NCBI RefSeq assembly: GCF_001194135.2
Contig: NC_068982.1
Coordinates: forward strand, 116,191,165-116,236,821
Origin: Octopus bimaculoides
Lineage: Eukaryota
DNA length: 45,657 nucleotides
Direction of reading: 5' to 3'
Positions within the stretch are counted from its first letter, which is position 1; every line of letters begins with the position of its first letter. Positions 1,592 through 44,806 of the stretch are shown one piece after another. The notes under the pieces were generated by a model, which worked only from the letters and a program-made list of their open reading frames with translations, had not been told where the DNA came from and searched no databases. The position numbers and the translations under genes were made by a program.

Positions 1592-2277
1592 NNNNNNNNN
1601 NNNNNNNNNNNNNNNNNNNNNNNNNNNNNNNNNNNNNNNNNNNNNNNNNNNNNNNNNNNNNNNNNNNNNNNNNNNNNNNNNNNNNNNNNNNNNNNNNNNN
1701 NNNNNNNNNNNNNNNNNNNNNNNNNNNNNNNNNNNNNNNNNNNNNNNNNNNNNNNNNNNNNNNNNNNNNNNNNNNNNNNNNNNNNNNNNNNNNNNNNNNN
1801 NNNNNNNNNNNNNNNNNNNNNNNNNNNNNNNNNNNNNNNNNNNNNNNNNNNNNNNNNNNNNNNNNNNNNNNNNNNNNNNNNNNNNNNNNNNNNNNNNNNN
1901 NNNNNNNNNNNNNNNNNNNNNNNNNNNNNNNNNNNNNNNNNNNNNNNNNNNNNNNNNNNNNNNNNNNNNNNNNNNNNNNNNNNNNNNNNNNNNNNNNNNN
2001 NNNNNNNNNNNNNNNNNNNNNNNNNNNNNNNNNNNNNNNNNNNNNNNNNNNNNNNNNNNNNNNNNNNNNNNNNNNNNNNNNNNNNNNNNNNNNNNNNNNN
2101 NNNNNNNNNNNNNNNNNNNNNNNNNNNNNNNNNNNNNNNNNNNNNNNNNNNNNNNNNNNNNNNNNNNNNNNNNNNNNNNNNNNNNNNNNNNNNNNGAAAA
2201 GTGAATCATCTCCACACGCTTTGTAAACGTAACGAATGGTAAGAAGAGTCATTGATTGGCACCAAACGCGCAGCCCG

Positions 2278-2533
2278 CAGCGGCGAAGCTCCAATTATCG
2301 TTATTATCTCTGGTAGAATCGGTAGCACGCTGAACGAAAGGCTTAGCGGTAGGTATTTCACCCGTCGCTACGTTCTGAGTTCTAATTCCGCAGAGGTCGA
2401 CTTTGCCTTTCATCCTTTCGGGGTCGATAAATTAAGAACCAGCGGAACACTGGTGTCGATGTAATCGACTTATCGCCCTACCCCAAAATTGCTGCTCTTG
2501 TGGCAAAATTTGAAACCATTATTATTATTATTA
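2278..2533 (+). mobile_element. tRNA-derived SINE (family B here)
   Basis: A-box-like ggtagaatcgg, B-box-like gagttctaattcc, core gtcgactttgcctttcatcctttcggggtcgataaatt, (ATT)n tail. Confidence 0.8.
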
Positions 2534-4728: not shown

Positions 4729-5338
4729 CGTGTGTGTGTAGATATACAAGTAGATAGATATTTAAGCTTGAAGTGAACAGCCAGAAACAATGTGACCGTT
4801 TCTGCATAATTTCCATACATTCTGAAGTTGTTTATTGTATTCTACATTGTTAAGTTTTTGGGTTTTCTGGTTGGAGGGTATGGTTCTTGTTCAGTGCTCA
4901 AAAATTTCTTTTATTGCCACTGCAGCAGTCTCTATTCTTCTGTATTAGATATCTATGTACCTCATTTATGCAGCTACATCAGACTTAACTTCATCTAAAA
5001 TTTTATGACTCACCTTTGCAGAGTCATAAAATTTTGTAAGAAATCAGTATTATTACGATAGGGGAGACACTGGATAACAAAATGAGAAGAGCGCGGGACG
5101 AATACCTTGCCATATTTAATAACGACTATTTACGTTCTGGGTTCAATTCCCACCAACGTTGGCTTTGTTTTTCATCCCACCACCAGAATGAGCTGATGAA
5201 AATCATCCAAATATCGGATTAATATAACCGATTTCTATCGCTCTCTTTCTTTCTATCCATACATCTCTCTCTCTCTCCTCTCTCTCCTCTCTCTATCATA
5301 ATGTGTGACCTTTTTGCCGATGATATAAATTCTTATTA

Positions 5339-5551
5339 AGGCAGCGAGCTGGCAGAAATGTTAGCACGCCGGACGAAATCCTTAGCGGTATTCCGTCTGT
5401 CTTTACGTTCTGAGTTCAAATTCCACCGAGGTCGACTTTGCTTTTCATCCTTTCGGGGTCGATAAATTAAGTACCAATTACGTACTGGAGTCGATCTAAT
5501 CGACTGGTCCCCTCTCCCTAAATTTCGGGCCTTGTACGTAGAGTAGAAAAG
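5339..5551 (+). mobile_element. SINE family B, full length with TSD
   Basis: Starts aggcagcgagctggcagaa, ends agtagaaaag; perfect 17-bp TSD gatataaattcttatta at 5322-5338 and 5552-5568. Confidence 0.92.
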
Positions 5552-5669
5552 GATATAAATTCTTATTAGGTCTAGGGATAACAGAAATGTTAGAGTGTCA
5601 AAACATATGATTCTGTTTCTCTTGCTTGTCTCAGTTGCATCATATAATGTTTAATGCTATTTTACATCG

Positions 5670-6040: not shown

Positions 6041-7440
6041 CAGAGCATTCATTTTCTTTACAATGCGACAATATCTTGAAATGTATTTGCAGTATTCAAA
6101 ATAATACCAACGTTTCAGATACTTTACTAGTCTATAAACAAGATACAGACATCAACTACAAACTTCCACCGAAACAGTGAAATTGTAAGATCTGTGCAGA
6201 CAAAATTTGAGTGTCGTTAGGCTATTCTCGGACACATCTATAAAACAATGTCAGCAAAAATATATCGCCCAAGTACTCCAAAAGGAAGTAAATAACAATC
6301 TACGAATCGAAGATATTGGTTCTCACTTTGAAGAATATTCTTTTAGTATGCAGGAACAAAAACAGGGATGCAGATAAACCACGTAAATGCGACATTTAAT
6401 GCTAACTGTGGAATTTACACATCATAAGTAGTTGTCCAAAATGCCATCACTGTATAGTATATAATATTTAATTTCATATATATATATATTCAAACAAGAA
6501 GGCGAATTAGTTTGCATCTGGTCTTGTCTCGAGTCCGCGGTATTGAAAAGTTACAAAGATGAAGAAACATTAACGTCTATCGTTCCTGTAACGAGACTTG
6601 ATGTGAGTTACCTCGCTTGTCTATGACTTCCAGATGTTTTAACACTAGGCGAATTCTTGAGAATATGTTCTCTTACACCTACAACCGCAGCCTGCCACGA
6701 ACTGTGTCCGATACATACATACATACATACATACATACATACATANNNNNNNNNNNNNNNNNNNNNNNNNNNNNNNNNNNNNNNNNNNNNNNNNNNNNNN
6801 NNNNNNNNNNNNNNNNNNNNNNNNNNNNNNNNNNNNNNNNNNNNNNNNNNNNNNNNNNNNNNNNNNNNNNNNNNNNNNNNNNNNNNNNNNNNNNNNNNNN
6901 NNNNNNNNNNNNNNNNNNNNNNNNNNNNNNNNNNNNNNNNNNNNNNNNNNNNNNNNNNNNNNNNNNNNNNNNNNNNNNNNNNNNNNNNNNNNNNNNNNNN
7001 NNNNNNNNNNNNNNNNNNNNNNNNNNNNNNNNNNNNNNNNNNNNNNNNNNNNNNNNNNNNNNNNNNNNNNNNNNNNNNNNNNNNNNNNNNNNNNNNNNNN
7101 NNNNNNNNNNNNNNNNNNNNNNNNNNNNNNNNNNNNNNNNNNNNNNNNNNNNNNNNNNNNNNNNNNNNNNNNNNNNNNNNNNNNNNNNNNNNNNNNNNNN
7201 NNNNNNNNNNNNNNNNNNNNNNNNNNNNNNNNNNNNNNNNNNNNNNNNNNNNNNNNNNNNNNNNNNNNNNNNNNNNNNNNNNNNNNNNNNNNNNNNNNNN
7301 NNNNNNNNNNNNNNNNNNNNNNNNNNNNNNNNNNNNNNNNNNNNNNNNNNNNNNNNNNNNNNNNNNNNNNNNNNNNNNNNNNNNNNNNNNNNNNNNNNNN
7401 NNNNNNNNNNNNNNNNNNNNNNNNNNNNNNNNNNNNNNNN

Positions 7441-8066
7441 GGGTCTAGCGAATGTGGAGAAGAGAAGGATGATGGTTTCATAGTCCCTAGATTGAAAAGT
7501 TCTGAGTATCCATGAGCACATTCTGCAGGCAACATCAACTTTTTTTGCTGATGTGCACACTCCAGCTAAGGTTGCTGTCGACAGTTACACCTAAGTCTCT
7601 GATATTCAAGTAGGTCTCCCGACGATAGTGTATATGGTTGTTTGAGTATGCCGCTTTTCCAAAGTGACTGAGCTCAAATTTTTCTTCGTTCAGCTGCATA
7701 TTGCTTCTTTTGTGCCCACTAGGTTACTACGCAAAGGTCCGATTGAAACATTGCTCGATCATATGCTCCTTTAATGACTTTCTGAAGCTTAGAGTCATCT
7801 GCAAATATTTTAATGGTGTTATGTTCAATGGAATCTACAATGTCATTGATATAGACAATAAAAAGAAGTGGACCCAGCACAGTGCTATGCCGGACTCCGC
7901 TGATGACTTTCGCTGGTCTTGAGAGGATGTCATCAACCACAACATGCTGGGTCCTGTTTGTTAGGAAATACTTAATCCATTGAAGTAGTTTACCACCGAC
8001 TCCAGCGTTAGATGGTTTCCTTAACAGTATATTGTGGTTGACTCTGTCTAACAATATTAGTGGACT
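7441..8066 (-). mobile_element. Decayed CR1/L2/Jockey-type LINE reverse transcriptase fragment
   Basis: LDRVNHNILL..WIKYFLTNRTQ.V..SGVRHSTVLGPLLFIVYINDI..IKIFADDSKL (RT motifs; PQG decayed), then in another frame CSWILRTFQSRDYETIILLFSTFARP; stops and frameshifts. Confidence 0.88.
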
Positions 8067-8850: not shown

Positions 8851-9950
8851 TAAAGGTGTCTGACAAAATAATGGAAACACCTAGCAACATAGCATCATAA
8901 TTTTGAAGTATCTATAAAAACAGTCACAAACTTGTTTATTCTTTATGTCTTGATTTATTATTAGTGTTGCTTAATATGTTTTTCTAAAATTGATATTTCT
9001 TTGTAGATATCATCAGAAAAAGTTAATTAAAAATCATTAAAATGACATATCTTTCGGACTTTCAAAGAGGTCAAATTGTTGGTGCTCGTATGGCAGGCGC
9101 TAACCTAACGAAAACAGTCGAAATGTTTGATGTATCAAGAAGTACCGTCTCGAAAGTAATGACAGCCTTTGAGAAAGAGGGGAAAACCTCTTCGTCGAAG
9201 CAAAACTCCGGAAGAAAACCAAAACTTTCAGATAAGGACCGTCGGACGCTTAAGCGAATTGTTAAAAAGGATCACAAAAGTACAGCTCCCAAAATGACTG
9301 CAGAGCTTAATGACTACCTAGAGAACCAGGTTTCCACAAAAATTGTTCGCTGGGAGCTGAACGAAGCCGGATTTCACGGCAGGGCTGCAATCAGAAAACC
9401 ACCACGTTCAAAAACAAACGTTGCAAACCGTTTAGAGTGGAGTAAAAACCTACAGAATTGGTCCCTAGAGCAGTGGAAGAATGTTATTTTCTCGGACGAG
9501 TCATCCTTTACCTTATTTCCGACCACCGGCCGAGTATGCGTGTGGAGACTGCTAAAAGAAGCATTTGACCCAGACTGCCTTCTTCCAACTGTTAAACATG
9601 GAGGAGGATCTGTGATGATTTGTGGGGTGCTATATCTTGGAGATCCGCCGCCCCAATGGTTCATGACAAAATTGATAGTCAAGACTATTTAAGCATTTAT
9701 CTGATCAAATTCATCCTATGGCTGCAGAATTATTTCCGGAGGGAAACGCAATCTTTCAGGATGATAATGCACCAGTTCGCACAGCTGTTACTGAATGGCA
9801 CGAGGAACATTCTAGTGAAGTTGAACATCTTATCTGGCCACCACAGTCCCCATATCTCAATATTATTGAACATTTATGGTGCATTTTAGAAAAACAAGTA
9901 AGGTGTCGATATCCTCCACTATCATCACTACAAAACTGGCTCTTGCCGTA
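8851..9950 (+). mobile_element. Tc1-family DNA transposon, frameshifted transposase, 3' end lost
   Basis: ORF from 9042: MTYLSDFQRGQIVGA..VSRSTVSKVM (HTH), GRKPKL, VIFSDES, KHGGGSVM; frameshifts near 9620 and 9695; FQDDNAP..WPPQSPYLNIIEHLW completes the DDE triad. Candidate left terminus taaaggtgtctgacaaaataatggaaacacc after TA; no matching right TIR found. Confidence 0.92.
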
Positions 9951-10195
9951 GATTCTACGGCAAGAGCCAGTTGTAGAATCACACAAAAAACATGTTCGCG
10001 CTGGTGTTCGTGCTGCGGATTTTGAAATATTTTAAATTATTTTAAATGTCTTTCATTGTAAGATTCATGAATTCATCTGAATTCATCAGATTCATGAATT
10101 CATCAGATTTTTCTAATGTTATAATGTACTCATTTATCAATTCAAAAATTCGTTAAAACGGCCGTAATGGATTGACACTGTCCATCAGATGTTAC

Positions 10196-13399: not shown

Positions 13400-13405
13400 T
13401 TTATT
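13400..13405 (-). terminator. Candidate polyadenylation signal (AATAAA) of the CCP/SRCR gene
   Basis: TTTATT on + strand, 234 nt downstream of the stop codon; AT-rich context so chance occurrence is possible. Confidence 0.35.
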
Positions 13406-13638: not shown

Positions 13639-15555
13639 TTATTCAGGGAAAATATATCCCCGGCATGAAACAACAACTAAGTCTGTACAAAACACATTTG
13701 CTTGTTTAGTTCGGCACTGTAGGATGTTTTCTTCATCGCCAGAACACGCAATACCCATGAATTTTGCTCGAACTCCTGAAGAACTGTAGGATCTTAACTT
13801 TCGGCCGCTTTTGAAACCTAACATTCGGCATAATACTTTTGATTCGGATTTACCCCATATGCCAACACCAGAGTAAAAATGATCGCAGACACCTCCCCAA
13901 CTGCCATCAGTGAAGATTTCTGCAACTCCAATGGTTTCACCAAACGAATAGCTGAGTCTAACATTAATCGAAACACACCGTGGCGTTGGATTCCAAGTTT
14001 CATTAATACATTTAGGTTGGATTTCTTTTAGTTTTCTGAAACCGTTTCTACAGGAATACGACAGGAAAATTTCATATAAAGACCTAGTTTTAGTTTTATT
14101 GTATTTGAAGTCGAATTCTGCATCTTTCATTGCAAAAAATTTAGGAAGCTCACAAGATTTCACGCATTCTGGTACCGGACGTGACCATGTGCCTCTGCGA
14201 GAACAAATTCGGTTATCTGTGTTAGATATTTGATAGCCTTTCTTGCAATCATACTGTACAAAGACCGTACCAATTTGATCGACAATTATTGCATTCTTTG
14301 GTATATTCGGTTCCACACATGCAAAAGACCTGATGCAAAATATAGCTGGGACCCAAATTCCATTAATGCATGTAATAGCTCCTTCATAGGCATTTTTGAA
14401 ACGTTTTTTGCAGGAGTACATTATTTGCCGTCCATAAGATATCTCTGCTGAAGTACTCAATGCTTCAAAGGTTGGTAATAACCACAATGGTTTTGCTAGT
14501 CCTCTTATATCTGGAATCAAGCAAACTGGTTTGCAAGCAGGAATCTCTGTATTCCACTTTCCGTCAGCTTGACACGTGATATGCGATTTACCGACAAGAC
14601 TATATCCTTCCATACATCGATAGACAAGTGTCGTATTGAAAATGGTTTCCTGTTTATCTTCTTCAATAAATCCATGATCTGGCGGCAGAGGTTTTGGACA
14701 TTTCACTAATTGACAAGAAGGGAACGTACCCGTCCAGTTTCCATCTTCGCCACACACCAAGGTTTTGTTTCCAAGCAACTCATAACCATACTCACAAGAA
14801 AACGTTATTGTAGAATTGACTGTATGCCCAGTTTTCGATACTTTCCGACCATTGGAGGGCACTTGGAGTTTTCTTAAACATTTCACAATTTCACATGTAG
14901 CGTTATGGTACCAAACTCCATTCCGACAGCGAAGATCACCGTTAGCCGCTCCTACACGAATATAATAGCGGTCACATATAACTCTTGGAATAATATCATC
15001 CGGAGAATTACCGAGTGCAAAAACAAATTTTCCGTTTGGTATTTCTGGGAAATGTCCGCAGTTGATTAAACTCATTAAAGTTTCAATGAATCGCTCGTTT
15101 CGTCTGCTAATCACATGACACTGAATAAGCTCTGGTTTATCTTTCAGAAAAGTGTAATTAATGCTCACCGATCCATTAAATGGTTGTAAACTAATTTGTA
15201 AAGATTCTTCACGGAAAACTGTGTAGGCTGATTCACCACTGCCTTCATTCATATTATTGGTATTCTCTGGAGCTATTACTGATTCACCTGATGCTATTTC
15301 CATTTTATTCTGTTCTCCTTCAATGCTGCTACGAATATTTTCTTTGTTAATGTCTCCTCCCGGGTGATTCCCACCATACATCGTAGTTTCACTGGTGTTC
15401 AATATTTCTCTCCCGATACTGTTTTCTCTTAACGTTGGATCTTTGAAATTCTTATCATTTTCAAAACTATCTCTTCCAAAAGAATCATTTGTTATTCCTG
15501 CTTGACTAAAGTCTACAGAAATGGCAATTAATAAAACCAGAAGTTCTCCTGCCAT
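13639..15555 (-). CDS. Secreted multidomain protein: signal peptide, ~145-aa acidic linker, 6 Sushi/CCP modules, C-terminal SRCR domain (638 aa, single coding exon)
   Basis: Uninterrupted 1.9-kb ORF ending TAA at 13639. Preferred start is the ATG at 15555 (aatATGG context) followed by hydrophobic MAGELLVLLIAISVDFSQA; the ORF track's TTG start at 15600 adds 15 unlikely residues. Six C..C..C..W..C modules at aa ~166-221, 226-281, 286-341, 345-407, 413-464, 468-527 (e.g. FSCEYGYELLGNKTLVCGEDGNWTGTFPSC). SRCR motifs VRL..GVAEIF.DGSWGGVCD..KVLCRMLGF..C.G.E..I.QC..VVSC at aa ~532-631. No TM segment. Confidence 0.93.
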   Translation of the reverse strand: MAGELLVLLIAISVDFSQAGITNDSFGRDSFENDKNFKDPTLRENSIGREILNTSETTMYGGNHPGGDINKENIRSSIEGEQNKMEIASGESVIAPENTNNMNEGSGESAYTVFREESLQISLQPFNGSVSINYTFLKDKPELIQCHVISRRNERFIETLMSLINCGHFPEIPNGKFVFALGNSPDDIIPRVICDRYYIRVGAANGDLRCRNGVWYHNATCEIVKCLRKLQVPSNGRKVSKTGHTVNSTITFSCEYGYELLGNKTLVCGEDGNWTGTFPSCQLVKCPKPLPPDHGFIEEDKQETIFNTTLVYRCMEGYSLVGKSHITCQADGKWNTEIPACKPVCLIPDIRGLAKPLWLLPTFEALSTSAEISYGRQIMYSCKKRFKNAYEGAITCINGIWVPAIFCIRSFACVEPNIPKNAIIVDQIGTVFVQYDCKKGYQISNTDNRICSRRGTWSRPVPECVKSCELPKFFAMKDAEFDFKYNKTKTRSLYEIFLSYSCRNGFRKLKEIQPKCINETWNPTPRCVSINVRLSYSFGETIGVAEIFTDGSWGGVCDHFYSGVGIWGKSESKVLCRMLGFKSGRKLRSYSSSGVRAKFMGIACSGDEENILQCRTKQANVFCTDLVVVSCRGYIFPE

Positions 15556-16189
15556 ATTACACAATGCGGTAAAATGCATATGCTTGCAGTTCCCGCGCAA
15601 ATAATATTATTTACTAACAATCGTGTATCTGTGCGCGCGTCCGTTTATGTATGCGCACGCGTATCTGAACTTTTTGAACTTCGTACGCAAATAACTTCTG
15701 CCATTTTCTCCTTTCTTTCTCTGAACCTTTTCCTAATTATTTTCAAAAATCCCGTTTCTTCATCCATGTGTGCATGTATGTATGTATGTATGTATGTGTG
15801 TGTTTATGTATAGGAAATGCCTTTTGAGGGGCGAGCAGTAGAGGGACGGTATTGGTTGTTTCCGGAATGTAATGTTATAGCACTTGTACACTCGTACACA
15901 CGTACGTATGTGAATGTGTTTTGTATACATGTGTGCGTGCGCCCGTGTATGTAGAAAGAGACAAACAGAAAGACAGACAGTGAGAGAGAGTGAGCGAGAA
16001 AGAAATACAGAAAGAAAGCGAGAAAGAAAGAGAGAAGAAGGGACGGAGGGAAGGAGGAAAATGTGTAGTGTATGTTTTTTGTGTGGAGTGCTCGTGTATG
16101 TAAGTACATGAGACAACTTTGACGATGCTATGTAAGCATCAACTCAGATTACGTGCTGCTAGCTTTAAGTAATAACCTTGGAAGAAGAA

Positions 16190-16239: not shown

Positions 16240-16303
16240 NNNNNNNNNNNNNNNNNNNNNNNNNNNNNNNNNNNNNNNNNNNNNNNNNNNNNNNNNNNNN
16301 NNN

Positions 16304-21070: not shown

Positions 21071-22347
21071 CAGTGGCGACTCCGGCACTCGGGCTGTTCG
21101 GGCTTAGTCCGCGCATAAATTTTCTAAAGTGAACGTGAAGCTGATTTAATTTGTGCCAACACTGACTTCAAGTATGTAATTTCAGCCAATAACTCGGGCG
21201 TTTTTTTATTGAGCTTGGTCGCAGTTCATTTATCTTCGTTCAGCGTCTGGCGATCGTCTTAGAGGTGCCCTGTGTCAAAAAATATCATTCGTAGCCGACG
21301 TTCTCTCGACATCGTTCACATGTGCCTGACTCGGGCTCAGAAGTTACAGCCCGAGTTGTTATCTATAATCGTAAAACTTAAAAGCAATTCGAATTCAATA
21401 TTTTCTTGAAACAATAAATTAGGATTTAAATTGCAATCTATGAAAAGTTTCCGTTCTACAATACTCATAAAGGAACGAAAAATTATGCAGCAACTCGGGC
21501 TAATACGAACGAGCCTGGTAGGTATAAAAGACTAACTGGCATCTTTTGTCAAGNNNNNNNNNNNNNNNNNNNNNNNNNNNNNNNNNNNNNNNNNNNNNNN
21601 NNNNNNNNNNNNNNNNNNNNNNNNNNNNNNNNNNNNNNNNNNNNNNNNNNNNNNNNNNNNNNNNNNNNNNNNNNNNNNNNNNNNNNNNNNNNNNNNNNNN
21701 NNNNNNNNNNNNNNNNNNNNNNNNNNNNNNNNNNNNNNNNNNNNNNNNNNNNNNNNNNNNNNNNNNNNNNNNNNNNNNNNNNNNNNNNNNNNNNNNNNNN
21801 NNNNNNNNNNNNNNNNNNNNNNNNNNNNNNNNNNNNNNNNNNNNNNNNNNNNNNNNNNNNNNNNNNNNNNNNNNNNNNNNNNNNNNNNNNNNNNNNNNNN
21901 NNNNNNNNNNNNNNNNNNNNNNNNNNNNNNNNNNNNNNNNNNNNNNNNNNNNNNNNNNNNNNNNNNNNNNNNNNNNNNNNNNNNNNNNNNNNNNNNNNNN
22001 NNNNNNNNNNNNNNNNNNNNNNNNNNNNNNNNNNNNNNNNNNNNNNNNNNNNNNNNNNNNNNNNNNNNNNNNNNNNNNNNNNNNNNNNNNNNNNNNNNNN
22101 NNNNNNNNNNNNNNNNNNNNNNNNNNNNNNNNNNNNNNNNNNNNNNNNNNNNNNNNNNNNNNNNNNNNNNNNNNNNNNNNNNNNNNNNNNNNNNNNNNNN
22201 NNNNNNNNNNNNNNNNNNNNNNNNNNNNNNNNNNNNNNNNNNNNNNNNNNNNNNNNNNNNNNNNNNNNNNNNNNNNNNNNNNNNNNNNNNNNNNNNNNNN
22301 NNNNNNNNNNNNNNNNNNNNNNNNNNNNNNNNNNNNNNNNNNNNNNN

Positions 22348-23609: not shown

Positions 23610-24895
23610 NNNNNNNNNNNNNNNNNNNNNNNNNNNNNNNNNNNNNNNNNNNNNNNNNNNNNNNNNNNNNNNNNNNNNNNNNNNNNNNNNNNNNNNNNNN
23701 NNNNNNNNNNNNNNNNNNNNNNNNNNNNNNNNNNNNNNNNNNNNNNNNNNNNNNNNNNNNNNNNNNNNNNNNNNNNNNNNNNNNNNNNNNNNNNNNNNNN
23801 NNNNNNNNNNNNNNNNNNNNNNNNNNNNNNNNNNNNNNNNNNNNNNNNNNNNNNNNNNNNNNNNNNNNNNNNNNNNNNNNNNNNNNNNNNNNNNNNNNNN
23901 NNNNNNNNNNNNNNNNNNNNNNNNNNNNNNNNNNNNNNNNNNNNNNNNNNNNNNNNNNNNNNNNNNNNNNNNNNNNNNNNNNNNNNNNNNNNNNNNNNNN
24001 NNNNNNNNNNNNNNNNNNNNNNNNNNNNNNNNNNNNNNNNNNNNNNNNNNNNNNNNNNNNNNNNNNNNNNNNNNNNNNNNNNNNNNNNNNNNNNNNNNNN
24101 NNNNNNNNNNNNNNNNNNNNNNNNNNNNNNNNNNNNNNNNNNNNNNNNNNNNNNNNNNNNNNNNNNNNNNNNNNNNNNNNNNNNNNNNNNNNNNNNNNNN
24201 NNNNNNNNNNNNNNNNNNNNNNNNNNNNNNNNNNNNNNNNNNNNNNNNNNNNNNNNNNNNNNNNNNNNNNNNNNNNNNNNNNNNNNNNNNNNNNNNNNNN
24301 NNNNNNNNNNNNNNNNNNNNNNNNNNNNNNNNNNNNNNNNNNNNNNNNNNNNNNNNNNNNNNNNNNNNNNNNNNNNNNNNNNNNNNNNNNNNNNNNNNNN
24401 NNNNNNNNNNNNNNNNNNNNNNNNNNNNNNNNNNNNNNNNNNNNNNNNNNNNNNNNNNNNNNNNNNNNNNNNACCACCACCACCACCACCACCACCACCA
24501 CCGCCACATCACCGCAGGGGACTCCATAGACTTTCATCGCAAAGATCAATATTTCCTGTCAGGCTTCCATTTGAATGCTTTCTCTCACCTATGTACTGTA
24601 ACCTCTCGTTTTCTCCCACACTTTTAATTCTGTACTTATTGTTCTACATGGGGTCATATCCGACAGCAGCGCACACTCCTAAAATTCCATACAGTGACGT
24701 CCTACATTCGACCTCATCCCAGACACACACATGAAAAGAGACATTGAAAATATCCTTGTCGTCGTGTCAGCTGAAGTCATCTTCGGCAGCAACATGTTAT
24801 AAAAAAAGAAAAAGTAAAGTCATGCATTTACAACCTTCATTAAAATAATTCATGTCGCTACAAATATTGAATCTTACATCACACTATAATATATT

Positions 24896-26342: not shown

Positions 26343-29141
26343 NNNNNNNNNNNNNNNNNNNNNNNNNNNNNNNNNNNNNNNNNNNNNNNNNNNNNNNNNN
26401 NNNNNNNNNNNNNNNNNNNNNNNNNNNNNNNNNNNNNNNNNNNNNNNNNNNNNNNNNNNNNNNNNNNNNNNNNNNNNNNNNNNNNNNNNNNNNNNNNNNN
26501 NNNNNNNNNNNNNNNNNNNNNNNNNNNNNNNNNNNNNNNNNNNNNNNNNNNNNNNNNNNNNNNNNNNNNNNNNNNNNNNNNNNNNNNNNNNNNNNNNNNN
26601 NNNNNNNNNNNNNNNNNNNNNNNNNNNNNNNNNNNNNNNNNNNNNNNNNNNNNNNNNNNNNNNNNNNNNNNNNNNNNNNNNNNNNNNNNNNNNNNNNNNN
26701 NNNNNNNNNNNNNNNNNNNNNNNNNNNNNNNNNNNNNNNNNNNNNNNNNNNNNNNNNNNNNNNNNNNNNNNNNNNNNNNNNNNNNNNNNNNNNNNNNNNN
26801 NNNNNNNNNNNNNNNNNNNNNNNNNNNNNNNNNNNNNNNNNNNNNNNNNNNNNNNNNNNNNNNNNNNNNNNNNNNNNNNNNNNNNNNNNNNNNNNNNNNN
26901 NNNNNNNNNNNNNNNNNNNNNNNNNNNNNNNNNNNNNNNNNNNNNNNNNNNNNNNNNNNNNNNNNNNNNNNNNNNNNNNNNNNNNNNNNNNNNNNNNNNN
27001 NNNNNNNNNNNNNNNNNNNNNNNNNNNNNNNNNNNNNNNNNNNNNNNNNNNNNNNNNNNNNNNNNNNNNNNNNNNNNNNNNNNNNNNNNNNNNNNNNNNN
27101 NNNNNNNNNNNNNNNNNNNNNNNNNNNNNNNNNNNNNNNNNNNNNNNNNNNNNNNNNNNNNNNNNNNNNNNNNNNNNNNNNNNNNNNNNNNNNNNNNNNN
27201 NNNNNNNNNNNNNNNNNNNNNNNNNNNNNNNNNNNNNNNNNNNNNNNNNNNNNNNNNNNNNNNNATATACATACATACATACATACATACATACATACAT
27301 ACAAGTGGTCACCCGGCCTTCGCCCCTGTATGTACTGCACTCTACTCAAATGTATCCAAAAAGCATCTGTCCCAATAGCCATGTGTCAATTCGTAGTTAA
27401 GGGCTGCTAGTCTCCACACTTCACGAGAAAAAAGTCTAAATTCCCACCTGATGTTGCTCTGATATTTCCTGTTCTCTGGAGCGAGCATTTTTGGCTGCGT
27501 TACTTCAAAAATTGTTCCGCTCACAACTATTCTCTCAAGTGAACTTTTCTACTGGCTTAAGACTCCATCTAGCATACGTATGGTGTATCAAACACTCAAA
27601 GGAAAAAAATAGTCGATAAATAAAACTTATTAATCAATATATTAGACTCACTTCGTTCCATATCAAGATGAACGATGTAATCTTGACAAATGCTACACAA
27701 CTGCAGATTCAATAGTAACTTACCATGTACGGTACTACCTATACTACCAGATGGTACCATTTTACTCCGTGGGAAATAAATAAGTATACGTATGTAGAAA
27801 GAGGGAACAGTCATGCCTGGGGAGCCTTTTATTTATTATACACCTCCTCGTTCATAGTCAACTTGGGGCTGAAGCACAATACAGTATCCACCATCATTTC
27901 AAATCAAAAGCATAATATATCAGTATCGTTGCAGTTATCTCCCTTGTTCCATTGTTTGTCGCCCACCGAATCTGATTGCTTAATGATATGAGTCCTTTTT
28001 GTGTTTGACGGGGATCCTTTTTTGTGCGTGGCTGGAGCCCTATGTGTGTGTGTGTGGGGGGGGTCGTTTAGCATCTATAGGATCTATAACATTAAGCCTA
28101 CCTACACAAGTATACCCCACCAACTTTGTTTCTTAATAATGTCCAGAAAAATGGATATTTTTTTTAATGAAATTTATTTTATAAATATGCAAATTCTGAT
28201 TATATTGGAATTTGCTACAAAAAGATTTTTCCGAGGGCGGAGAGGGAAGATTCTAAAAGTCATAAATGTCAATTTTGTNNNNNNNNNNNNNNNNNNNNNN
28301 NNNNNNNNNNNNNNNNNNNNNNNNNNNNNNNNNNNNNNNNNNNNNNNNNNNNNNNNNNNNNNNNNNNNNNNNNNNNNNNNNNNNNNNNNNNNNNNNNNNN
28401 NNNNNNNNNNNNNNNNNNNNNNNNNNNNNNNNNNNNNNNNNNNNNNNNNNNNNNNNNNNNNNNNNNNNNNNNNNNNNNNNNNNNNNNNNNNNNNNNNNNN
28501 NNNNNNNNNNNNNNNNNNNNNNNNNNNNNNNNNNNNNNNNNNNNNNNNNNNNNNNNNNNNNNNNNNNNNNNNNNNNNNNNNNNNNNNNNNNNNNNNNNNN
28601 NNNNNNNNNNNNNNNNNNNNNNNNNNNNNNNNNNNNNNNNNNNNNNNNNNNNNNNNNNNNNNNNNNNNNNNNNNNNNNNNNNNNNNNNNNNNNNNNNNNN
28701 NNNNNNNNNNNNNNNNNNNNNNNNNNNNNNNNNNNNNNNNNNNNNNNNNNNNNNNNNNNNNNNNNNNNNNNNNNNNNNNNNNNNNNNNNNNNNNNNNNNN
28801 NNNNNNNNNNNNNNNNNNNNNNNNNNNNNNNNNNNNNNNNNNNNNNNNNNNNNNNNNNNNNNNNNNNNNNNNNNNNNNNNNNNNNNNNNNNNNNNNNNNN
28901 NNNNNNNNNNNNNNNNNNNNNNNNNNNNNNNNNNNNNNNNNNNNNNNNNNNNNNNNNNNNNNNNNNNNNNNNNNNNNNNNNNNNNNNNNNNNNNNNNNNN
29001 NNNNNNNNNNNNNNNNNNNNNNNNNNNNNNNNNNNNNNNNNNNNNNNNNNNNNNNNNNNNNNNNNNNNNNNNNNNNNNNNNNNNNNNNNNNNNNNNNNNN
29101 NNNNNNNNNNNNNNNNNNNNNNNNNNNNNNNNNNNNNNNNN

Positions 29142-29819: not shown

Positions 29820-30365
29820 GTACGTACATAGACTGTATTCCTTCTGCACAACTTCAGGAGTGGACGGCCGAAAATATTCATGATCATTTTAGCCCTAACA
29901 TTTGGCCTTCTAGTTCTGCTAATTTAACCCCCTTCTACTATTATGTTTGGGGCGTCCTTGAGAGGGACATCAACAAGCATGCGAACTATATTACGTTTCG
30001 TTGATTTCTTCCACAGGCGACGATACAGCCAACATGAATAAAGATGACTTGAACAACGCATTTAGTCGTTTCTGAAGCTGTATGAAAGCAGTAAGCGAGA
30101 TTGATAGCTATTTTATTGAATAACCTTTTCATATATTCTATGAAAATATATTGATTTTTCTGACAAATATTTATATTTTCTTAAATCGTTACTTGCAGCG
30201 TGAATAAATATTTTTTCTTCTTTCGTCTGGCATCTGTCATATTGTTGTTTTCAATAGGCAAATTTTGTACTTGTTTTATCTTTTATTTGCATCTGAATAC
30301 TAAGCTCTTTACATCTTAGAACTGAACTATTTCTATATACAATGCAAGGGACTTAATCCATATAA

Positions 30366-30581
30366 TTCTTCCTACTGGAAGTACAAGGCCTCAAATTTGT
30401 GGGAAGGGATTAAGTCGATTACATTCATCCCAGTGCGTAACTAGTACTTAACTTATCGACCCCAAAAGGATGAAAAGCAAAGTCAACCTCGACGGCATTT
30501 GAACTCAGAACATGAAGATAGACGAAATACCGCTAAGCATTTTTTTTCCGGAAGGTTAACGATTCTGCCACTCGCCGCCTT
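30366..30581 (-). mobile_element. SINE family B
   Basis: Reverse complement of head (ctcgccgcctt) and core (cgaccccaaaaggatgaaaagcaaagtc). Confidence 0.88.
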
Positions 30582-30699
30582 GCTTAACTAATATAATAGT
30601 TAGCAGTTATGTTATATACTGTTACATCATCTTTGTGAAAGTTATTTTAATAAATATTTTAGCTTTCCTTAAATTAAAATGTTGCTTTCAATATGACAG

Positions 30700-32035: not shown

Positions 32036-32283
32036 AGTAGAAAACCACCACCATATGTATGTATGTATGTATGTATGTGTGCAGATTTGTATGTTTTGCT
32101 TTGTGAATGTTTTCTCCTGCATATACTTGCATATGTAGACATGCTCGTATATACTTACATGGTAAACTTCTGGAAAGTTTTACAGATTTTTACAGTTCCG
32201 GTGAGGGACTGGATCTGTAGTCTTCGAATCAACTTTCTCCTTTCTGGTTTCGAGAAGCCTAATTTCTCAAGTCTTGTATTTAA

Positions 32284-32510
32284 TCAGTGTGTTACATATC
32301 CCAGTGCCCCAATAATTACAGGTATAAACCTGAACTTATAATCTGGATAAAGTAACTGCAGATTTCCCAATAGTTCAGCGTATGTATTCTCTTTTCCACT
32401 GATCTTCAGCTTTACGTTAACATTCGCTGGGCAGCCAATTTCCACAACTGTACACAGTTTCTCTTCTCCATCCCAAATCATTATATCAGGTCTATTGTGT
32501 TTACATTTAT
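32284..32510 (-). mobile_element. C-terminal RLE fragment of a second R4-like LINE family
   Basis: CKHNRPDIMIWDGEEKLCTVVEIGCP..KENTYAEL..FRFIPVIIGALG (PD..E..K pattern, IIGALG end). Confidence 0.75.
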
Positions 32511-32559
32511 TGAAGTTTTCGCAGGGACATGTATGTATGTATGTATGTATGTATGTATG

Positions 32560-33459: not shown

Positions 33460-33505
<46 letters not shown>

Positions 33506-33715
33506 CCTTCTACTATAGGCACAGGGCCTGAAATTTCGGGGGAGGGGACTAGTCAATCACATCGACCCAGTGTTTCACTGGTACGTAATTTATCGACCTC
33601 GAAAGGATGAAAGGCAAAGTCGACCTCGGCGGAATTTGGACTCAGAACATAAAGACAGACGAAATACTGCTAAGCATTTTGCCCGGCGCGCTAACAATTC
33701 TGCCAGCTCGCCGCC

Positions 33716-33717
<2 letters not shown>
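33506..33717 (-). mobile_element. SINE family B flanked on both sides by (AAT)n
   Basis: Full head to tail; (AAT)n at 33460-33505 and 33718-33755. Confidence 0.92.
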
Positions 33718-33758
<41 letters not shown>

Positions 33759-34048
33759 TGATGATGATGATGATGATATACATACATACATACATACAAA
33801 CAAACGAATGAACAAACAAGAAATCTTGGAATAAACTGAATAATGACATACATACATGTATGTATCTCTGTCACCACCCCTCTCTGAAACCACCATTCGC
33901 AGAAACTTCAACATACACAACTTGGCTTTCGCATCCATCATTCACTGATTTTGCCGGTACAGAATCTTTTGTAATTCTTAACTTTTTAAACAATCAGTTT
34001 TATTCTCTTCGTGCATCCCTAACCAAGACAGATACTCAGAACATCATT

Positions 34049-34261
34049 CTTTTCTACTCTAGGCACAAGGCCTGAGATTTTGGAGGTAGGGGCCAGTCGA
34101 CTAGAACGACCCAGTACGCAGCTGGTACTTAATTTGTCGATTCCAAAAGGGTGAAAGGTAAAGTCGATCTCGGAGGAATTTGAACTCAGAACGTAAAGAC
34201 AGACGAAATAACGCTAAGCATTTCGTCCGGGGTGCTAACGTTTCTGCCAGCTCGCCGCCTT
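34049..34261 (-). mobile_element. SINE family B with TSD
   Basis: gatactcagaacatcatt (34031-34048) vs gatactctaaacatcatt (34262-34279), 16/18. Confidence 0.9.
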
Positions 34262-34565
34262 GATACTCTAAACATCATTGACATCTTTATCATCTTCAAA
34301 CCTATCCTTTATCAATCCATTACATCCTTGATATTTCTCGGAGCGTCAACCATTAACATATTTCAACTACTCGCCACATTTCGAGCACTTTAGGTACTTC
34401 AAACATTCTAGCAAACATACGAGTAAACTACTACCTAGTCTTATCCAGACGGTACCACTTTAGTCCAATTTAAACTTGTACGCTCAAATGTCATTAATAT
34501 ACAATTTAAACACCTCATACTACTCCTGAATTGTTTTCATGAAGCGATATTTCAGAAACCTTTTC

Positions 34566-38800: not shown

Positions 38801-39048
38801 NNNNNNNNNNNNNNNNNNNNNNNNNNNNNNNNNNNNNNNNNNNNNNNNNNNNNNNNNNNNNNNNNNNNNNNNNNNNNNNNNNNNNNNNNNNNNNNNNNNN
38901 NNNNNNNNNNNNNNNNNNNNNNNNNNNNNNNNNNNNNNNNNNNNNNNNNNNNNNNNNNNNNNNNNNNNNNNNNNNNNNNNNNNNNNNNNNNNNNNNNNNN
39001 NNNNNNNNNNNNNNNNNNNNNNNNNNNNNNNNNNNNNNNNNNNNNNNN

Positions 39049-43112: not shown

Positions 43113-43371
43113 GAATTGTTCAGTTCACGGGCGTGAAACGGTAAATAAAAATTAAGGGTGAGACAACTAATAAAAGAAACGGAGGGAAGTAAGTCAACTT
43201 ACTTTTAATCAAACTGCATACACAGCTGATACAGCATTCAAACAGTGAACGAATATTTTATTCTGCTCCATTGAATTACGTCATATAAATTTGTGCAAAT
43301 ACGAAACAAACAAAGCCTCTGAAGTGCTGAATTGACGGTGTAAATAAATAAATAAATAAGTAAATAAATAA

Positions 43372-43586
43372 TTCTTTCTACAATAGGCACAAGGTCTGAA
43401 ATTTGGGGAATAGGGTAAGTCGATTACATCGACCCCAATGCATAACTGGTACTTATTTAATCGACCCTGAAAGGATGAAAGGCAAAGTCGACCTCGACGG
43501 AATTTAAACTCAGAACGTAATGACGGACGAAATACAACTAAGCATTTTACCCGGCATGCTAAAGATTCTGCCAGCTCGCCACCTTG

Positions 43587-43621
<35 letters not shown>

Positions 43622-43977
43622 TCTTTCTACTATAGGCACAAGGCCTGAAATTTGAGAGGAGGGGTAAGTCGATTACATCGATCCCAGTGCGTAACTGGGC
43701 TTATTTAATCGACCCCGAAAGAATGAAAGGCAAAGTCGACCTCGGCGGAATTTGAACTCAGAACGTAAAGACGGACGAAAAGNNNNNNNNNNNNNNNNNN
43801 NNAGGGTAAGTCGATTACATCGACCCCAATGCATAACTGGTACTTATTTAATCGACCCTGAAAGGATGAAAGGCAAAGTCGACCTCGACGGAATTTAAAC
43901 TCAGAACGTAATGACGGACGAAATACAACTAAGCATTTTACCCGGCATGCTAAAGATTCTGCCAGCTCGCCACCTTG

Positions 43978-44012
<35 letters not shown>

Positions 44013-44225
44013 TCTTTCTACTATAGGCACAAGGCCTGAAATTTGAGAGGAGGGGTAAGTCGATTACATCGATCCCAGTGCGTAACTGGGCTTATTTAAT
44101 CGACCCCGAAAGAATGAAAGGCAAAGTCGACCTCGGCGGAATTTGAACTCAGAACGTAAAGACGGACGAAAAGCTGTTTAGCATTTCGCCTGGCGTGCTA
44201 CTGATTCTACCAGCTCGTCGCCTCA
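43372..44225 (-). mobile_element. Cluster of SINE family B copies separated by (AAT)n (two true copies, apparently doubled across a gap)
   Basis: Copies at 43372-43587 and 43622-43782, then 43803-44173 repeats 43412-43782 exactly by eye. Confidence 0.85.
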
Positions 44226-44806
44226 ATAACAACAACAACAACAACAACAACAACTACAATATGGGCAAGTTAAGATTAACCGATAGGAGAGGGATATGTA
44301 AAAGTCTTTCATACCCTCTCTGAGTTCCAGCTGTGTAATAGTGTCGATTCATCCAGATCGTATCTATACAGAATATTTGCTACATTAGCGGACAGAAATA
44401 TTACAGGATTTACGAATTTCCAATTTGTCGGCTACTTAGATCACAAATTTGTGATAAGCACGGTCGACTTATAAAGGGCGCATGGAAGGGACTCGTTTAC
44501 TTGTCGTTGAACGTTGTTTTTCCCGGCACATAGAGCCTACAGCAACTGGATTAGCGAATTAGGTGGTCGACGGGGTCAGTCGCTAGCAAACACGGTTGAA
44601 AATTCTGAAGAGCGCATCAAGAGTAGAATCAATATCTTTTACAAAAGAAATATCGACAGATAGAAATAGATTAGAGAAGGAGCGAGTAAGTAAATTATAA
44701 GAGACTATTAGATAAAGAAATATGACCGATGTGCTAATGACCTTAGACATTCAACGCGAAACAAGAAGTTTGTATAGTCATAACCGAAGTACATTCTCTT
44801 GGATAT

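What the first reader, a model, noticed from the sequence alone, without database searches (positions are those of the whole stretch)
13639..15555. Intronless secreted 6xCCP + SRCR protein: candidate lineage-specific retrogene combining complement-control and scavenger modules
Seen: 638 codons with no stop, seven extracellular modules and a signal peptide in one exon, in a window where everything else is decayed. Established: CCP and SRCR genes in animals are usually built one module per exon (or two) with phase-1 introns, and both modules are typical of innate-immune and complement-regulatory proteins. Inference: this is a retroposed or fully intron-lost gene kept intact by selection, and a CCP-array with a single terminal SRCR and no TM or protease domain could be a soluble pattern-recognition or complement-regulating factor. 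I do not recognise a named orthologue.
Basis: partly seen in the sequence, partly recalled or inferred. Interest (0 to 1): 0.72.

Follow-up and report, generated by a model that had tools for sequence, protein, structure and literature searches.

The report
Secreted sushi–SRCR gene of octopuses
This is a real octopus gene kept intact by selection: one exon holds its whole coding sequence, which encodes a secreted chain of six sushi (CCP) modules ending in one scavenger-receptor (SRCR) module, but it is an uncharacterised member of familiar protein families and shows no evidence of being a recent retrogene.

Summary
The open reading frame is real. It lies on the minus strand at 13639-15555 and encodes 638 aa. 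The next longest N-free open frame in the window is 221 codons.

Pfam finds five Sushi modules and one group-A SRCR. A sixth, N-terminal CCP rests only on its Cys/Trp spacing. A signal-peptide-like N-terminus is present, and there is no convincing transmembrane segment or hydrophobic (GPI-type) C-terminus.

The window is Octopus bimaculoides chromosome CM046602.1. Orthologues with an uninterrupted coding sequence occur in O. sinensis, O. vulgaris, a fourth Octopus-like species, Argonauta (65% aa identity) and a more distant unidentified lineage ("group B", 43%). All 31 cysteines are invariant.

dN/dS is 0.22-0.24 against Argonauta and 0.33-0.56 within Octopus, so selection is purifying but fairly relaxed.

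The retrogene reading is not supported. I found no parent gene, poly(A) remnant or target-site duplication. The gene predates the Octopus-Argonauta split. Group-B mRNA-like contigs carry a spliced 3'UTR intron, so only the coding sequence is intronless.

The NCBI name "SVEP1-like" is a misnomer. CCP+SRCR combinations are already known in sponges and echinoderms. Function is untested; my best guess is a soluble, possibly disulfide-linked, extracellular recognition or adaptor protein. Interest is modest.

The parts
13639..15555 (-). Complete coding sequence (638 codons plus TAA stop at 13639-13641) of the CCP6-SRCR protein, in a single coding exon
   Evidence: It is identical to residues 9-646 of the annotated O. 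bimaculoides protein P0001.
15499..15555 (-). Signal-peptide-like N-terminus (residues 1-19, MAGELLVLLIAISVDFSQA)
   Evidence: Hydropathy peak at residues 1-23. It is conserved in five octopod sequences. This is a heuristic call; SignalP was not run.
15220..15498 (-). Fast-evolving acidic region rich in N/S/G/E (residues 20-112), no Pfam match, predicted disordered, carrying at least two of the protein's 11 N-x-S/T sequons (N23, N53)
   Evidence: dN/dS 0.79 against Argonauta. Net charge -9. No Pfam family. pLDDT below 30. Not alignable with group B.
15061..15219 (-). Conserved family-specific 'pre-CCP' segment (residues 113-165): two predicted strands and an amphipathic helix, holding the invariant unpaired Cys146
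   Evidence: Conserved between octopods and group B. No Pfam match. Secondary structure comes only from low-confidence models.
14893..15060 (-). CCP1 (residues 166-221): a divergent CCP-like module
   Evidence: The four-Cys plus Trp spacing is invariant. Not significant by Pfam, hhalign or AF2.
14713..14880 (-). CCP2 (residues 226-281)
   Evidence: Sushi E=7e-13. AF2 pLDDT 72-90, with Foldseek hits to E-selectin, CD55 and beta2-GPI CCP pairs.
14533..14700 (-). CCP3 (residues 286-341)
   Evidence: Sushi E=1e-14. Confident AF2 model.
14335..14523 (-). CCP4 (residues 345-407), with a long C1-C2 loop
   Evidence: Sushi 21.2 bits against a cut-off of 20.7. Cys/Trp invariant.
14164..14319 (-). CCP5 (residues 413-464)
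   Evidence: Sushi E=8e-8.
13975..14154 (-). CCP6 (residues 468-527)
   Evidence: Sushi 22.1 bits against a cut-off of 20.7. Cys/Trp invariant.
13657..13965 (-). C-terminal SRCR domain (residues 531-633), group-A type with six Cys, VCDH in place of VCDD, and a 6-residue insertion after that motif
   Evidence: PF00530 45.8 bits. Best solved relatives are CD163, PIT54, CD5L, MARCO and SCARA5; every displayed alignment needs the same 6-residue gap.
15556..15700 (-). Conserved proximal upstream region, a putative 5'UTR or core promoter (inferred)
   Evidence: 92.6-93.2% identity to O. sinensis/O. vulgaris and 86% to the fourth Octopus species, similar to the CDS. The region further upstream is microsatellite and aligns poorly.
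13400..13405 (-). AATAAA, a candidate polyadenylation signal about 235 nt after the stop (inferred)
   Evidence: Present and conserved in all four Octopus-type sequences. No transcript data were available to confirm it.

Best explanation
This is a genuine protein-coding gene of Octopus bimaculoides, and it is old. Its whole coding sequence lies in one exon (window 15555-13639, minus strand).

Shown: the product has a signal-peptide-like N-terminus; a fast-evolving acidic region with N-glycosylation sequons; a conserved roughly 50-residue segment with one invariant unpaired cysteine; six tandem CCP/sushi modules joined by 3-5-residue linkers (five statistically supported, the first only pattern-supported); and one C-terminal group-A SRCR domain. 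There is no convincing TM segment, no hydrophobic (GPI-type) C-terminus and no protease domain. The gene has been kept under purifying but fairly relaxed selection in Octopus, in Argonauta and in a more distant, unidentified lineage. In that lineage it is transcribed, and its mRNA has a 3'UTR intron.

Unresolved: how the coding region came to lack introns. Ancient retroposition, intron loss and an ancestrally intron-poor gene all remain possible.

Inferred (about 0.3 on its own): the protein is secreted and works as a soluble extracellular recognition or adaptor molecule. The rigid CCP array would bind a protein partner, as CCP arrays do in complement regulators, beta2-glycoprotein I and selectins; a thioester/C3-like protein is one candidate. 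The SRCR domain, with its modified acidic site, would bind a second, possibly polyanionic or microbial, ligand. Cys146 would form an intermolecular disulfide, giving a dimer or a covalent partner.
For: ORF and domains.

Source and orthologues, all with uninterrupted CDS: O. bimaculoides GCA_001194135.2, O. sinensis, O. vulgaris, a fourth Octopus-type genome contig, Argonauta, and group-B genomic contigs bounded by (TA)n.

Conservation: all 31 Cys and the six CCP Trp are invariant over both lineages.

Selection: dN/dS is 0.23 at dS 0.93 against Argonauta and 0.33-0.56 within Octopus. Synonymous change exceeds non-synonymous change with Fisher p from 4e-3 to 3e-40.

Extent of homology: Octopus-Argonauta DNA similarity is confined to the CDS, beginning 5 nt before ATG 15555 and ending 22 nt before the stop codon.

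Transcription and splicing in group B: contigs L012 and L013 from two independent runs are 99.1-99.8% identical to genomic contig L015 of the same species. They leave it exactly at CTGA|GTAAGT, 45 nt past the stop.

No TM segment or hydrophobic C-terminus.
Against: There is no expression evidence for the Octopus gene itself. No RNA-derived Logan contig for it appeared among the protein hits, which hints at low or tissue-restricted expression.

The signal peptide was judged by eye, not by a predictor, and its n-region carries no positive charge.

CCP1 is not statistically supported.

Nothing tested here bears on ligand, oligomeric state or immune role.

The group-B taxon is unidentified, so 'conserved across cephalopod lineages' beyond octopods is an inference from 43% identity.
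Confidence: 0.72

Rival explanations
1. One reading: the gene is a processed retrogene, made by reverse transcription of the spliced mRNA of a multi-exon CCP/SRCR parent gene, inserted here and then preserved by selection. In the extreme version it replaced its parent.
For: Seven cysteine-rich modules and the signal peptide are encoded without any coding intron in at least eight genome sequences. In vertebrate RCA and SRCR genes these modules are typically one per exon (established knowledge). The gene sits alone in TE-rich DNA, with no other called gene within 10 kb on either side.
Against: No candidate parent was found. Apart from orthologues, every hit in the exhaustive search is a giant multi-CCP protein that matches only CCP2-3 repeatedly. 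There is no poly(A) remnant and no target-site duplication. The event would predate the Octopus-Argonauta split and the group-B split, so it is not a young lineage-specific retrocopy. Group-B transcripts carry a 3'UTR intron, and Argonauta has an acceptor-like T10ATTCCTCAG just before its ATG. Multi-module single exons are common in invertebrate CCP and SRCR genes; for example, sea-urchin SRCRs are single-exon (PMC10855680).
Confidence: 0.2
2. The protein is not immune-related. It could be an extracellular organiser or adhesion factor, such as a synaptic-cleft or matrix scaffold like the secreted CCP-array proteins Hig (Drosophila) and LEV-9 (C. elegans). Alternatively it could be a reproductive (gamete or egg-coat) recognition protein.
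For: The architecture is a secreted CCP array without catalytic domains. The rather high within-genus dN/dS (0.33-0.56) fits reproductive as well as immune proteins. The Geodia SRCR/SCR aggregation receptor is an adhesion molecule (PMC4557014). The Hig and LEV-9 comparison is from memory and is only a lead.
Against: No WAP or Ig domains as in LEV-9 or Hig. No tissue data of any kind were obtained.
Confidence: 0.25
3. The ORF is one large exon of a longer multi-exon coding gene, so the true protein is bigger.
For: Group-B mRNA-like contigs show that the transcript is spliced downstream of the ORF.
Against: The ORF starts with a conserved ATG plus signal peptide and ends with a stop at the same place in all Octopus sequences. 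Cross-family DNA homology starts 5 nt before the ATG. In group B the splice donor lies after the stop codon, and the 245 nt upstream of the ATG is colinear with the genome. The annotation pipelines call a single-exon CDS.
Confidence: 0.04
4. The ORF is a chance open frame or a decaying pseudogene.
For: It is surrounded by degraded repeats, and no Octopus transcript was seen.
Against: The probability of such a frame by chance is about 1e-15. It is intact in at least eight genome sequences from two deep lineages, with all 31 Cys invariant and dN/dS well below 1.
Confidence: 0.01

Closest known systems
Vertebrate CCP-array proteins: regulators of complement activation (CR1, CR2, factor H, DAF/CD55, MCP/CD46) and beta2-glycoprotein I
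   Same: Tandem CCP modules with 3-5-residue linkers. These are the best sequence hits among solved structures (CR1 1.5e-102, CR2, factor H, beta2-GPI). The modelled CCP2-3 pair superposes on CD55, beta2-GPI and E-selectin CCP pairs. Like factor H and beta2-GPI, it appears soluble.
   Different: It has a C-terminal SRCR, an N-terminal family-specific segment with a free Cys, and a disordered acidic leader. Identity is only 22-31%. No C3b/C4b-binding, cofactor or decay-accelerating activity was tested. It has a single coding exon rather than roughly one module per exon.
SVEP1 (the name NCBI pipelines gave the orthologues: 'sushi, von Willebrand factor type A, EGF and pentraxin domain-containing protein 1-like')
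   Same: It shares CCP modules, and the giant multi-CCP proteins are the top non-orthologous hits.
   Different: It has no vWA, EGF, pentraxin or HYR domain. It is 638 aa against about 3,500. It has an SRCR, which SVEP1 lacks. The name reflects best-hit transfer, not orthology.
Invertebrate SRCR+CCP proteins: the Geodia cydonium aggregation receptor (SRCR/SCR) and echinoderm SRCR-superfamily members with Sushi repeats
   Same: They combine the same two module types in one extracellular protein (PMC4557014). Sushi is among the top partner domains of SRCR in sea urchin and starfish, and four Sushi modules are counted among O. bimaculoides SRCR-superfamily genes (PMC10855680). All invertebrate SRCRs there are group A, as here.
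   Different: The sponge receptor is membrane-bound and has many SRCRs. Here there is one SRCR after six CCPs and no TM segment. No sequence-level orthology was seen.
Soluble or scavenger SRCR proteins (CD163, PIT54, CD5L, MARCO, SCARA5, Mac-2BP, DMBT1)
   Same: The SRCR fold matches at sequence level, with best E-values of 1e-12 to 4e-6.
   Different: It has six Cys (group A). VCDH replaces the usual VCDD acidic pair, and a conserved 6-residue insertion sits right after it, at the canonical cation/ligand site (site identity is from memory). There is a single domain only.

Membership tests
CCP/Sushi/SCR module superfamily (PF00084) | Profile match above Pfam's gathering score | tested here: met
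   Whole protein 139.3 bits against 20.7. CCP2-CCP6 individually score 49.1, 54.8, 21.2, 32.9 and 22.1 bits. CCP1 has no hit.
CCP/Sushi/SCR module superfamily (PF00084) | About 60 residues with four Cys (I-III, II-IV) and an invariant Trp between Cys III and IV | tested here: met
   All six modules show C...C...C-x4-6-W-x5-7-C, invariant in eight sequences. Disulfide connectivity itself is not testable here.
CCP/Sushi/SCR module superfamily (PF00084) | Beta-sandwich CCP fold | tested here: inconclusive
   CCP2-3 are modelled at pLDDT 72-90 and match CCP pairs in the PDB. CCP1 and CCP4-6 have low pLDDT.
SRCR superfamily, group A | Profile match to PF00530; six Cys, lacking the C1/C4 pair of group B | tested here: met
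   45.8 bits against 26.1. Cys at 557, 576, 604, 614, 623 and 631; 'MLGF' replaces 'QLGC', and there is no Cys before the first strand.
Regulators of complement activation (functional family) | Binds C3b/C4b and shows decay-accelerating or factor-I cofactor activity | not testable with these tools
   Only generic CCP similarity was found.
Regulators of complement activation (functional family) | Built essentially of CCP modules only (with or without TM/GPI or an oligomerisation tail) | tested here: not met
   It has an additional SRCR domain and a 145-residue non-CCP N-terminal part.
SVEP1 orthologue | vWA, EGF/EGF-Ca, HYR and pentraxin domains together with about 34 CCPs | tested here: not met
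   Pfam finds only Sushi and SRCR; cEGF is at E=0.77, below threshold.
Processed retrogene | No introns where the parent gene has them | tested here: inconclusive
   The CDS is uninterrupted in all genomes, but no parent is available for comparison, and group-B mRNA has a 3'UTR intron.
Processed retrogene | Identifiable intron-containing parent or paralogue elsewhere | tested here: not met
   Only two colinear hits, both orthologues, appear among the best 150 of 8,805 significant hits. The rest are giant multi-CCP proteins. Weaker colinear relatives below about 358 bits would not have been listed.
Processed retrogene | Poly(A) remnant and flanking target-site duplications | tested here: not met
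   No A-run of 8 or more within 2.6 kb downstream. No direct repeat pair brackets the gene. Decay is expected at this age, so this is weak evidence.

The most novel reading that the evidence does not exclude
The gene is a coleoid-cephalopod-specific orphan. In this reading an ancient retrocopy outlived and replaced its multi-exon parent. It now encodes a disulfide-linked soluble CCP6-SRCR factor that regulates or targets the cephalopod thioester-protein (C3-like) system, which would make it an independently evolved counterpart of vertebrate fluid-phase complement regulators.
Probability: 0.08. Interest if true: 0.55.

Novelty: new member of a known kind. Interest (0 to 1): 0.3.

Why it matters
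If the protein proves to be a humoral recognition or regulatory factor, it would add a defined and easily cloned component to the poorly known innate immune system of cephalopods (one exon, about 1.9 kb). It would also be an example of a CCP-SRCR architecture arising outside deuterostomes and sponges.

There are practical corrections too. The public O. bimaculoides model starts 8 codons too early. The 'SVEP1-like' name is misleading. The gene gives a clean case of a coding sequence with no introns but a spliced UTR.

Otherwise this is an ordinary uncharacterised lineage-restricted gene.

Tried and rejected
- **Full-length AlphaFold2** on a 5-sequence alignment gave pLDDT 34 and was unusable. 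A 238-residue sub-model resolved only CCP2-3, so neither CCP1 nor the pre-CCP segment could be confirmed structurally.
- **CCP1 support.** hhalign of CCP1 against CCP2/3 and a PDB profile search with CCP1 were both non-significant.
- **The search for homologous proteins with alignments A2 and A6** returned nothing new. It also failed to return sequences that were in the query alignments, so these nulls are uninformative.
- **Exhaustive representative search**. Its top-150 list is swamped by giant CCP proteins. Colinear relatives scoring below about 358 bits, such as other molluscs, could be hidden.
- **Identifying the taxon or tissue of the Logan runs** through paper searches failed. The only lead is that ERR3431203 directly precedes the Mytilus coruscus run ERR3431204 from the Ningbo/Stirling group. 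From memory, that group also sequenced a cuttlefish. This is unverified.
- **Linking the gene to expression data.** The O. bimaculoides data of PMC10855680 could not be used, because the stored supplement lacks the per-gene domain table.
- **The sigma-70 promoter and terminator scan** does not apply to a eukaryote and showed no enrichment.
- **A candidate mini-intron in the Octopus 3'UTR** (CAG|GTATAT ... TTTCAG, about 13533-13495) was rejected. The acceptor reads TTTCTG in O. sinensis and O. vulgaris.
- **The Logan contigs L003-L005** were first considered as transcripts. They begin in an (ATAC)n microsatellite and are colinear with the genome, so they are probably genomic.
Full report
**The observation**

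The ATG is at 15555, the TAA stop at 13641-13639, and the product is 638 aa. The stop-free stretch is 655 codons. The next longest N-free stretch in any frame of this 37%-GC window is 221 codons. From base composition, the chance of such a frame anywhere in the window is about 1e-15.

Pfam gives Sushi (139 bits, five stretches) and SRCR. Scanned separately, CCP2 to CCP6 each pass the Sushi gathering score, and the SRCR scores 45.8 bits against a cut-off of 26.1.

It has the full C-C-C-W-C spacing and a CG..P.IPNG start, invariant in all orthologues. It gets no Pfam hit. Its hhalign match is in register but non-significant (E=0.055), and its AlphaFold confidence is low. The fair count is therefore five confirmed CCPs plus one CCP-like module.

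The N-terminus MAGELLVLLIAISVDFSQA|G looks like a signal peptide. The only other hydrophobic peak lies inside CCP4, and the C-terminus is hydrophilic.

**Where the window comes from, and who else has the gene**

An exact-protein look-up places the window on Octopus bimaculoides chromosome CM046602.1 (GCA_001194135.2). Orthologues were found as follows.

| Source | aa identity to the window protein |
|---|---|
| O. sinensis | 87% |
| O. vulgaris | 87% |
| Fourth Octopus-type species (Logan contigs of 3 SRA runs, colinear with window 15787-12719 at 85.7% DNA identity, starting in an (ATAC)n microsatellite, so probably genomic) | 85% |
| Argonauta | 65-66% |

In every case the called gene span equals the CDS length, so there is no coding intron.

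An exhaustive HMMER search of 1.84 billion representatives found only one further colinear relative, P0075. It is 43% identical over residues 115-633 and represents a 14-member, Logan-only cluster. I call this cluster "group B".

Group-B genomic contigs come from at least three closely related species. They are bounded by (TA)n and again carry the ORF uninterrupted. I could not identify the group-B taxon. Its identity is lower than that of Argonauta, which suggests a non-octopod cephalopod. This is an inference.

**Selection**

| Comparison (Nei-Gojobori) | dN | dS | dN/dS |
|---|---|---|---|
| O. bimaculoides vs Argonauta | 0.218 | 0.93 | 0.23 |
| Between distinct Octopus lineages | – | – | 0.33-0.56 |

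(All values.) In the four comparisons tested, synonymous change exceeds non-synonymous change, with Fisher p from 4e-3 to 3e-40.

Against Argonauta the structured modules have omega 0.11-0.31. The leader (residues 20-112) is nearly neutral at 0.79 and is unalignable with group B. All 31 cysteines are invariant across both lineages, including the odd one, Cys146.

The gene is therefore functional, and it evolves fairly fast.

**Gene structure and the retrogene question**

Octopus-Argonauta DNA similarity is confined to the CDS and begins 5 nt before ATG 15555. The upstream ATG at 15579, used by the public 646-aa O. bimaculoides model, is out of frame in O. sinensis and O. vulgaris.

Within Octopus, the 145 nt upstream and about 200 nt downstream are as conserved as the CDS. 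An AATAAA at 13405-13400 is conserved in all four Octopus-type sequences. This suggests a compact transcript of about 2.2 kb (inferred).

Retroposition hallmarks are absent:
- no A-run of 8 or more downstream;
- no bracketing direct repeats;
- no parent-like paralogue.

At this age such marks would be gone anyway, so an ancient retroposition can be neither shown nor excluded.

In group B, two contigs from independent runs (SRR7369732 and SRR9970004) are 99.8% and 99.1% identical to a genomic contig of the same species (ERR12921337). They leave it exactly at CTGA|GTAAGT, 45 nt after the stop codon, and continue with unrelated sequence. That is what a spliced mRNA looks like. It gives evidence of transcription and shows that the gene has at least two exons, with only the UTR spliced.

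From established knowledge, a junction less than 50-55 nt after the stop would not trigger nonsense-mediated decay.

Argonauta has an acceptor-like T10ATTCCTCAG four nucleotides before its ATG. This hints at a 5'UTR intron there.

**Protein anatomy**

In order, the protein consists of:
1. a signal peptide;
2. an acidic leader rich in N/S/G/E, with N-glycosylation sequons (basic in group B, where it ends in a furin-like RNKR|S);
3. a conserved family-specific segment (residues 113-165), predicted at low confidence as two strands and an amphipathic helix, carrying the unpaired Cys146;
4. six CCPs joined by 3-5-residue linkers;
5. a group-A SRCR.

The SRCR's nearest solved relatives are CD163, PIT54, CD5L, MARCO and SCARA5. 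Relative to all of these, it has VCDH instead of VCDD followed by a 6-residue insertion, and this is conserved in group B. From memory, that position is the canonical cation/ligand site of SRCR domains, so the site appears remodelled.

The mature protein has a net charge of +8, and the leader alone -9.

**How it probably works**

What is shown is a secreted-type, multi-module extracellular protein with no catalytic or membrane-anchoring part. Everything else is inferred.

Two kinds of protein offer analogies:
- CCP arrays that act as extended protein-binding platforms (complement regulators, beta2-GPI and selectins are the best sequence and fold matches);
- soluble SRCR proteins.

On that basis the most likely role is a soluble recognition or adaptor factor, possibly disulfide-linked through Cys146. 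An immune role such as opsonin or regulator of a thioester protein is plausible. A matrix, synaptic or reproductive role is about equally plausible. No tissue information could be obtained.

No RNA-derived contig for the Octopus gene appeared among the hits. This weakly suggests low or restricted expression in commonly sampled tissues.

**Comparison with what is known, and novelty**

The gene is already predicted in public annotations under the automatic name 'SVEP1-like'. That name fails the membership test: no vWA, EGF, HYR or pentraxin domain, 638 aa, and an SRCR present.

The CCP+SRCR combination is not new. It occurs in the Geodia aggregation receptor (PMC4557014) and in many echinoderm SRCR-superfamily genes. 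The survey in PMC10855680 counts 20 SRCR-superfamily genes in O. bimaculoides, with four Sushi modules among them.

The specific arrangement does seem restricted to this family within the limits of the search. That arrangement is the pre-CCP segment with a free Cys, six CCPs, and one modified SRCR, all in a single coding exon. I therefore rate it a new, uncharacterised member of known kinds, of modest interest.

**What did not work**

- Full-length structure prediction gave pLDDT 34 and was unusable.
- Two word-index homology searches failed even to recover their own query sequences.
- Paper searches for run and protein accessions did not identify the group-B taxon.
- The gene could not be linked to published expression tables.
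- The bacterial promoter scan is not relevant to a eukaryote.

Noticed in passing
window 15556-15579 (minus strand): The public O. bimaculoides protein model (646 aa) starts at an upstream ATG (15579). That ATG is out of frame in O. sinensis and O. vulgaris and lies outside the Argonauta homology. The conserved start is 15555.
   Followed up: yes
L015 2765/2766; L013 2339/2340; L012 2200/2201 (group-B orthologue): RNA-like contigs from two runs leave the same species' genomic contig exactly at CTGA|GTAAGT, 45 nt after the stop. This indicates a 3'UTR intron and shows the orthologue is transcribed.
   Followed up: yes
L001 about 9975-10003 (Argonauta): A T10ATTCCTCAG acceptor-like motif ends 4 nt before the start codon, which suggests a 5'UTR intron in Argonauta. 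Octopus has no equivalent AG.
   Followed up: partly
L008 about 1060-1080 (group-B protein, 'QRNKR|SV'): The group-B N-terminal leader is basic and ends in a furin-type R-N-K-R|S site immediately before the conserved part. Octopods have an acidic leader without such a site.
   Followed up: no
window 9042-9692 (+) and 7719-8054 (-): There is a Tc1/mariner-type transposase remnant (HTH_Tnp_Tc3_2, E=8e-12; the open frame ends before any catalytic domain). There is also a reverse-transcriptase fragment (RVT_1, 22.9 bits, below cut-off).
   Followed up: partly
window 2315-2533, 5329-5568, 30362-30598, 33485-33778, 34051-34265, 43367-43620, 43809-44011, 43992-44261 and others: A roughly 250-nt interspersed repeat (SINE-like) has at least ten copies in the window at 72-85% identity to one element in the O. 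sinensis and O. vulgaris loci.
   Followed up: no
window 32172-32530 vs L001 1347-1705: This is the only Octopus-Argonauta DNA similarity outside the CDS longer than about 90 nt (71% over 362 nt). Its orientation relative to the gene is opposite in the two species, so it is probably a shared transposable element rather than a conserved regulatory block.
   Followed up: no
window 1592-2195, 6746-7440, 16240-16303, 21554-22347, 23610-24472, 26343-27264, 28279-29141, 38801-39048 and others: Eleven assembly gaps total 5,115 N, mostly next to microsatellites or homopolymer-like runs. One gap (16240-16303) lies only about 0.7 kb upstream of the gene, inside a (GA)n/(CA)n tract.
   Followed up: no
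window 13860-13890 (SRCR residues about 556-566): The SRCR carries VCDH plus a 6-residue insertion where CD163, PIT54 and other SRCRs have VCDD followed directly by xW. This is conserved in the 43%-identical lineage.
   Followed up: partly
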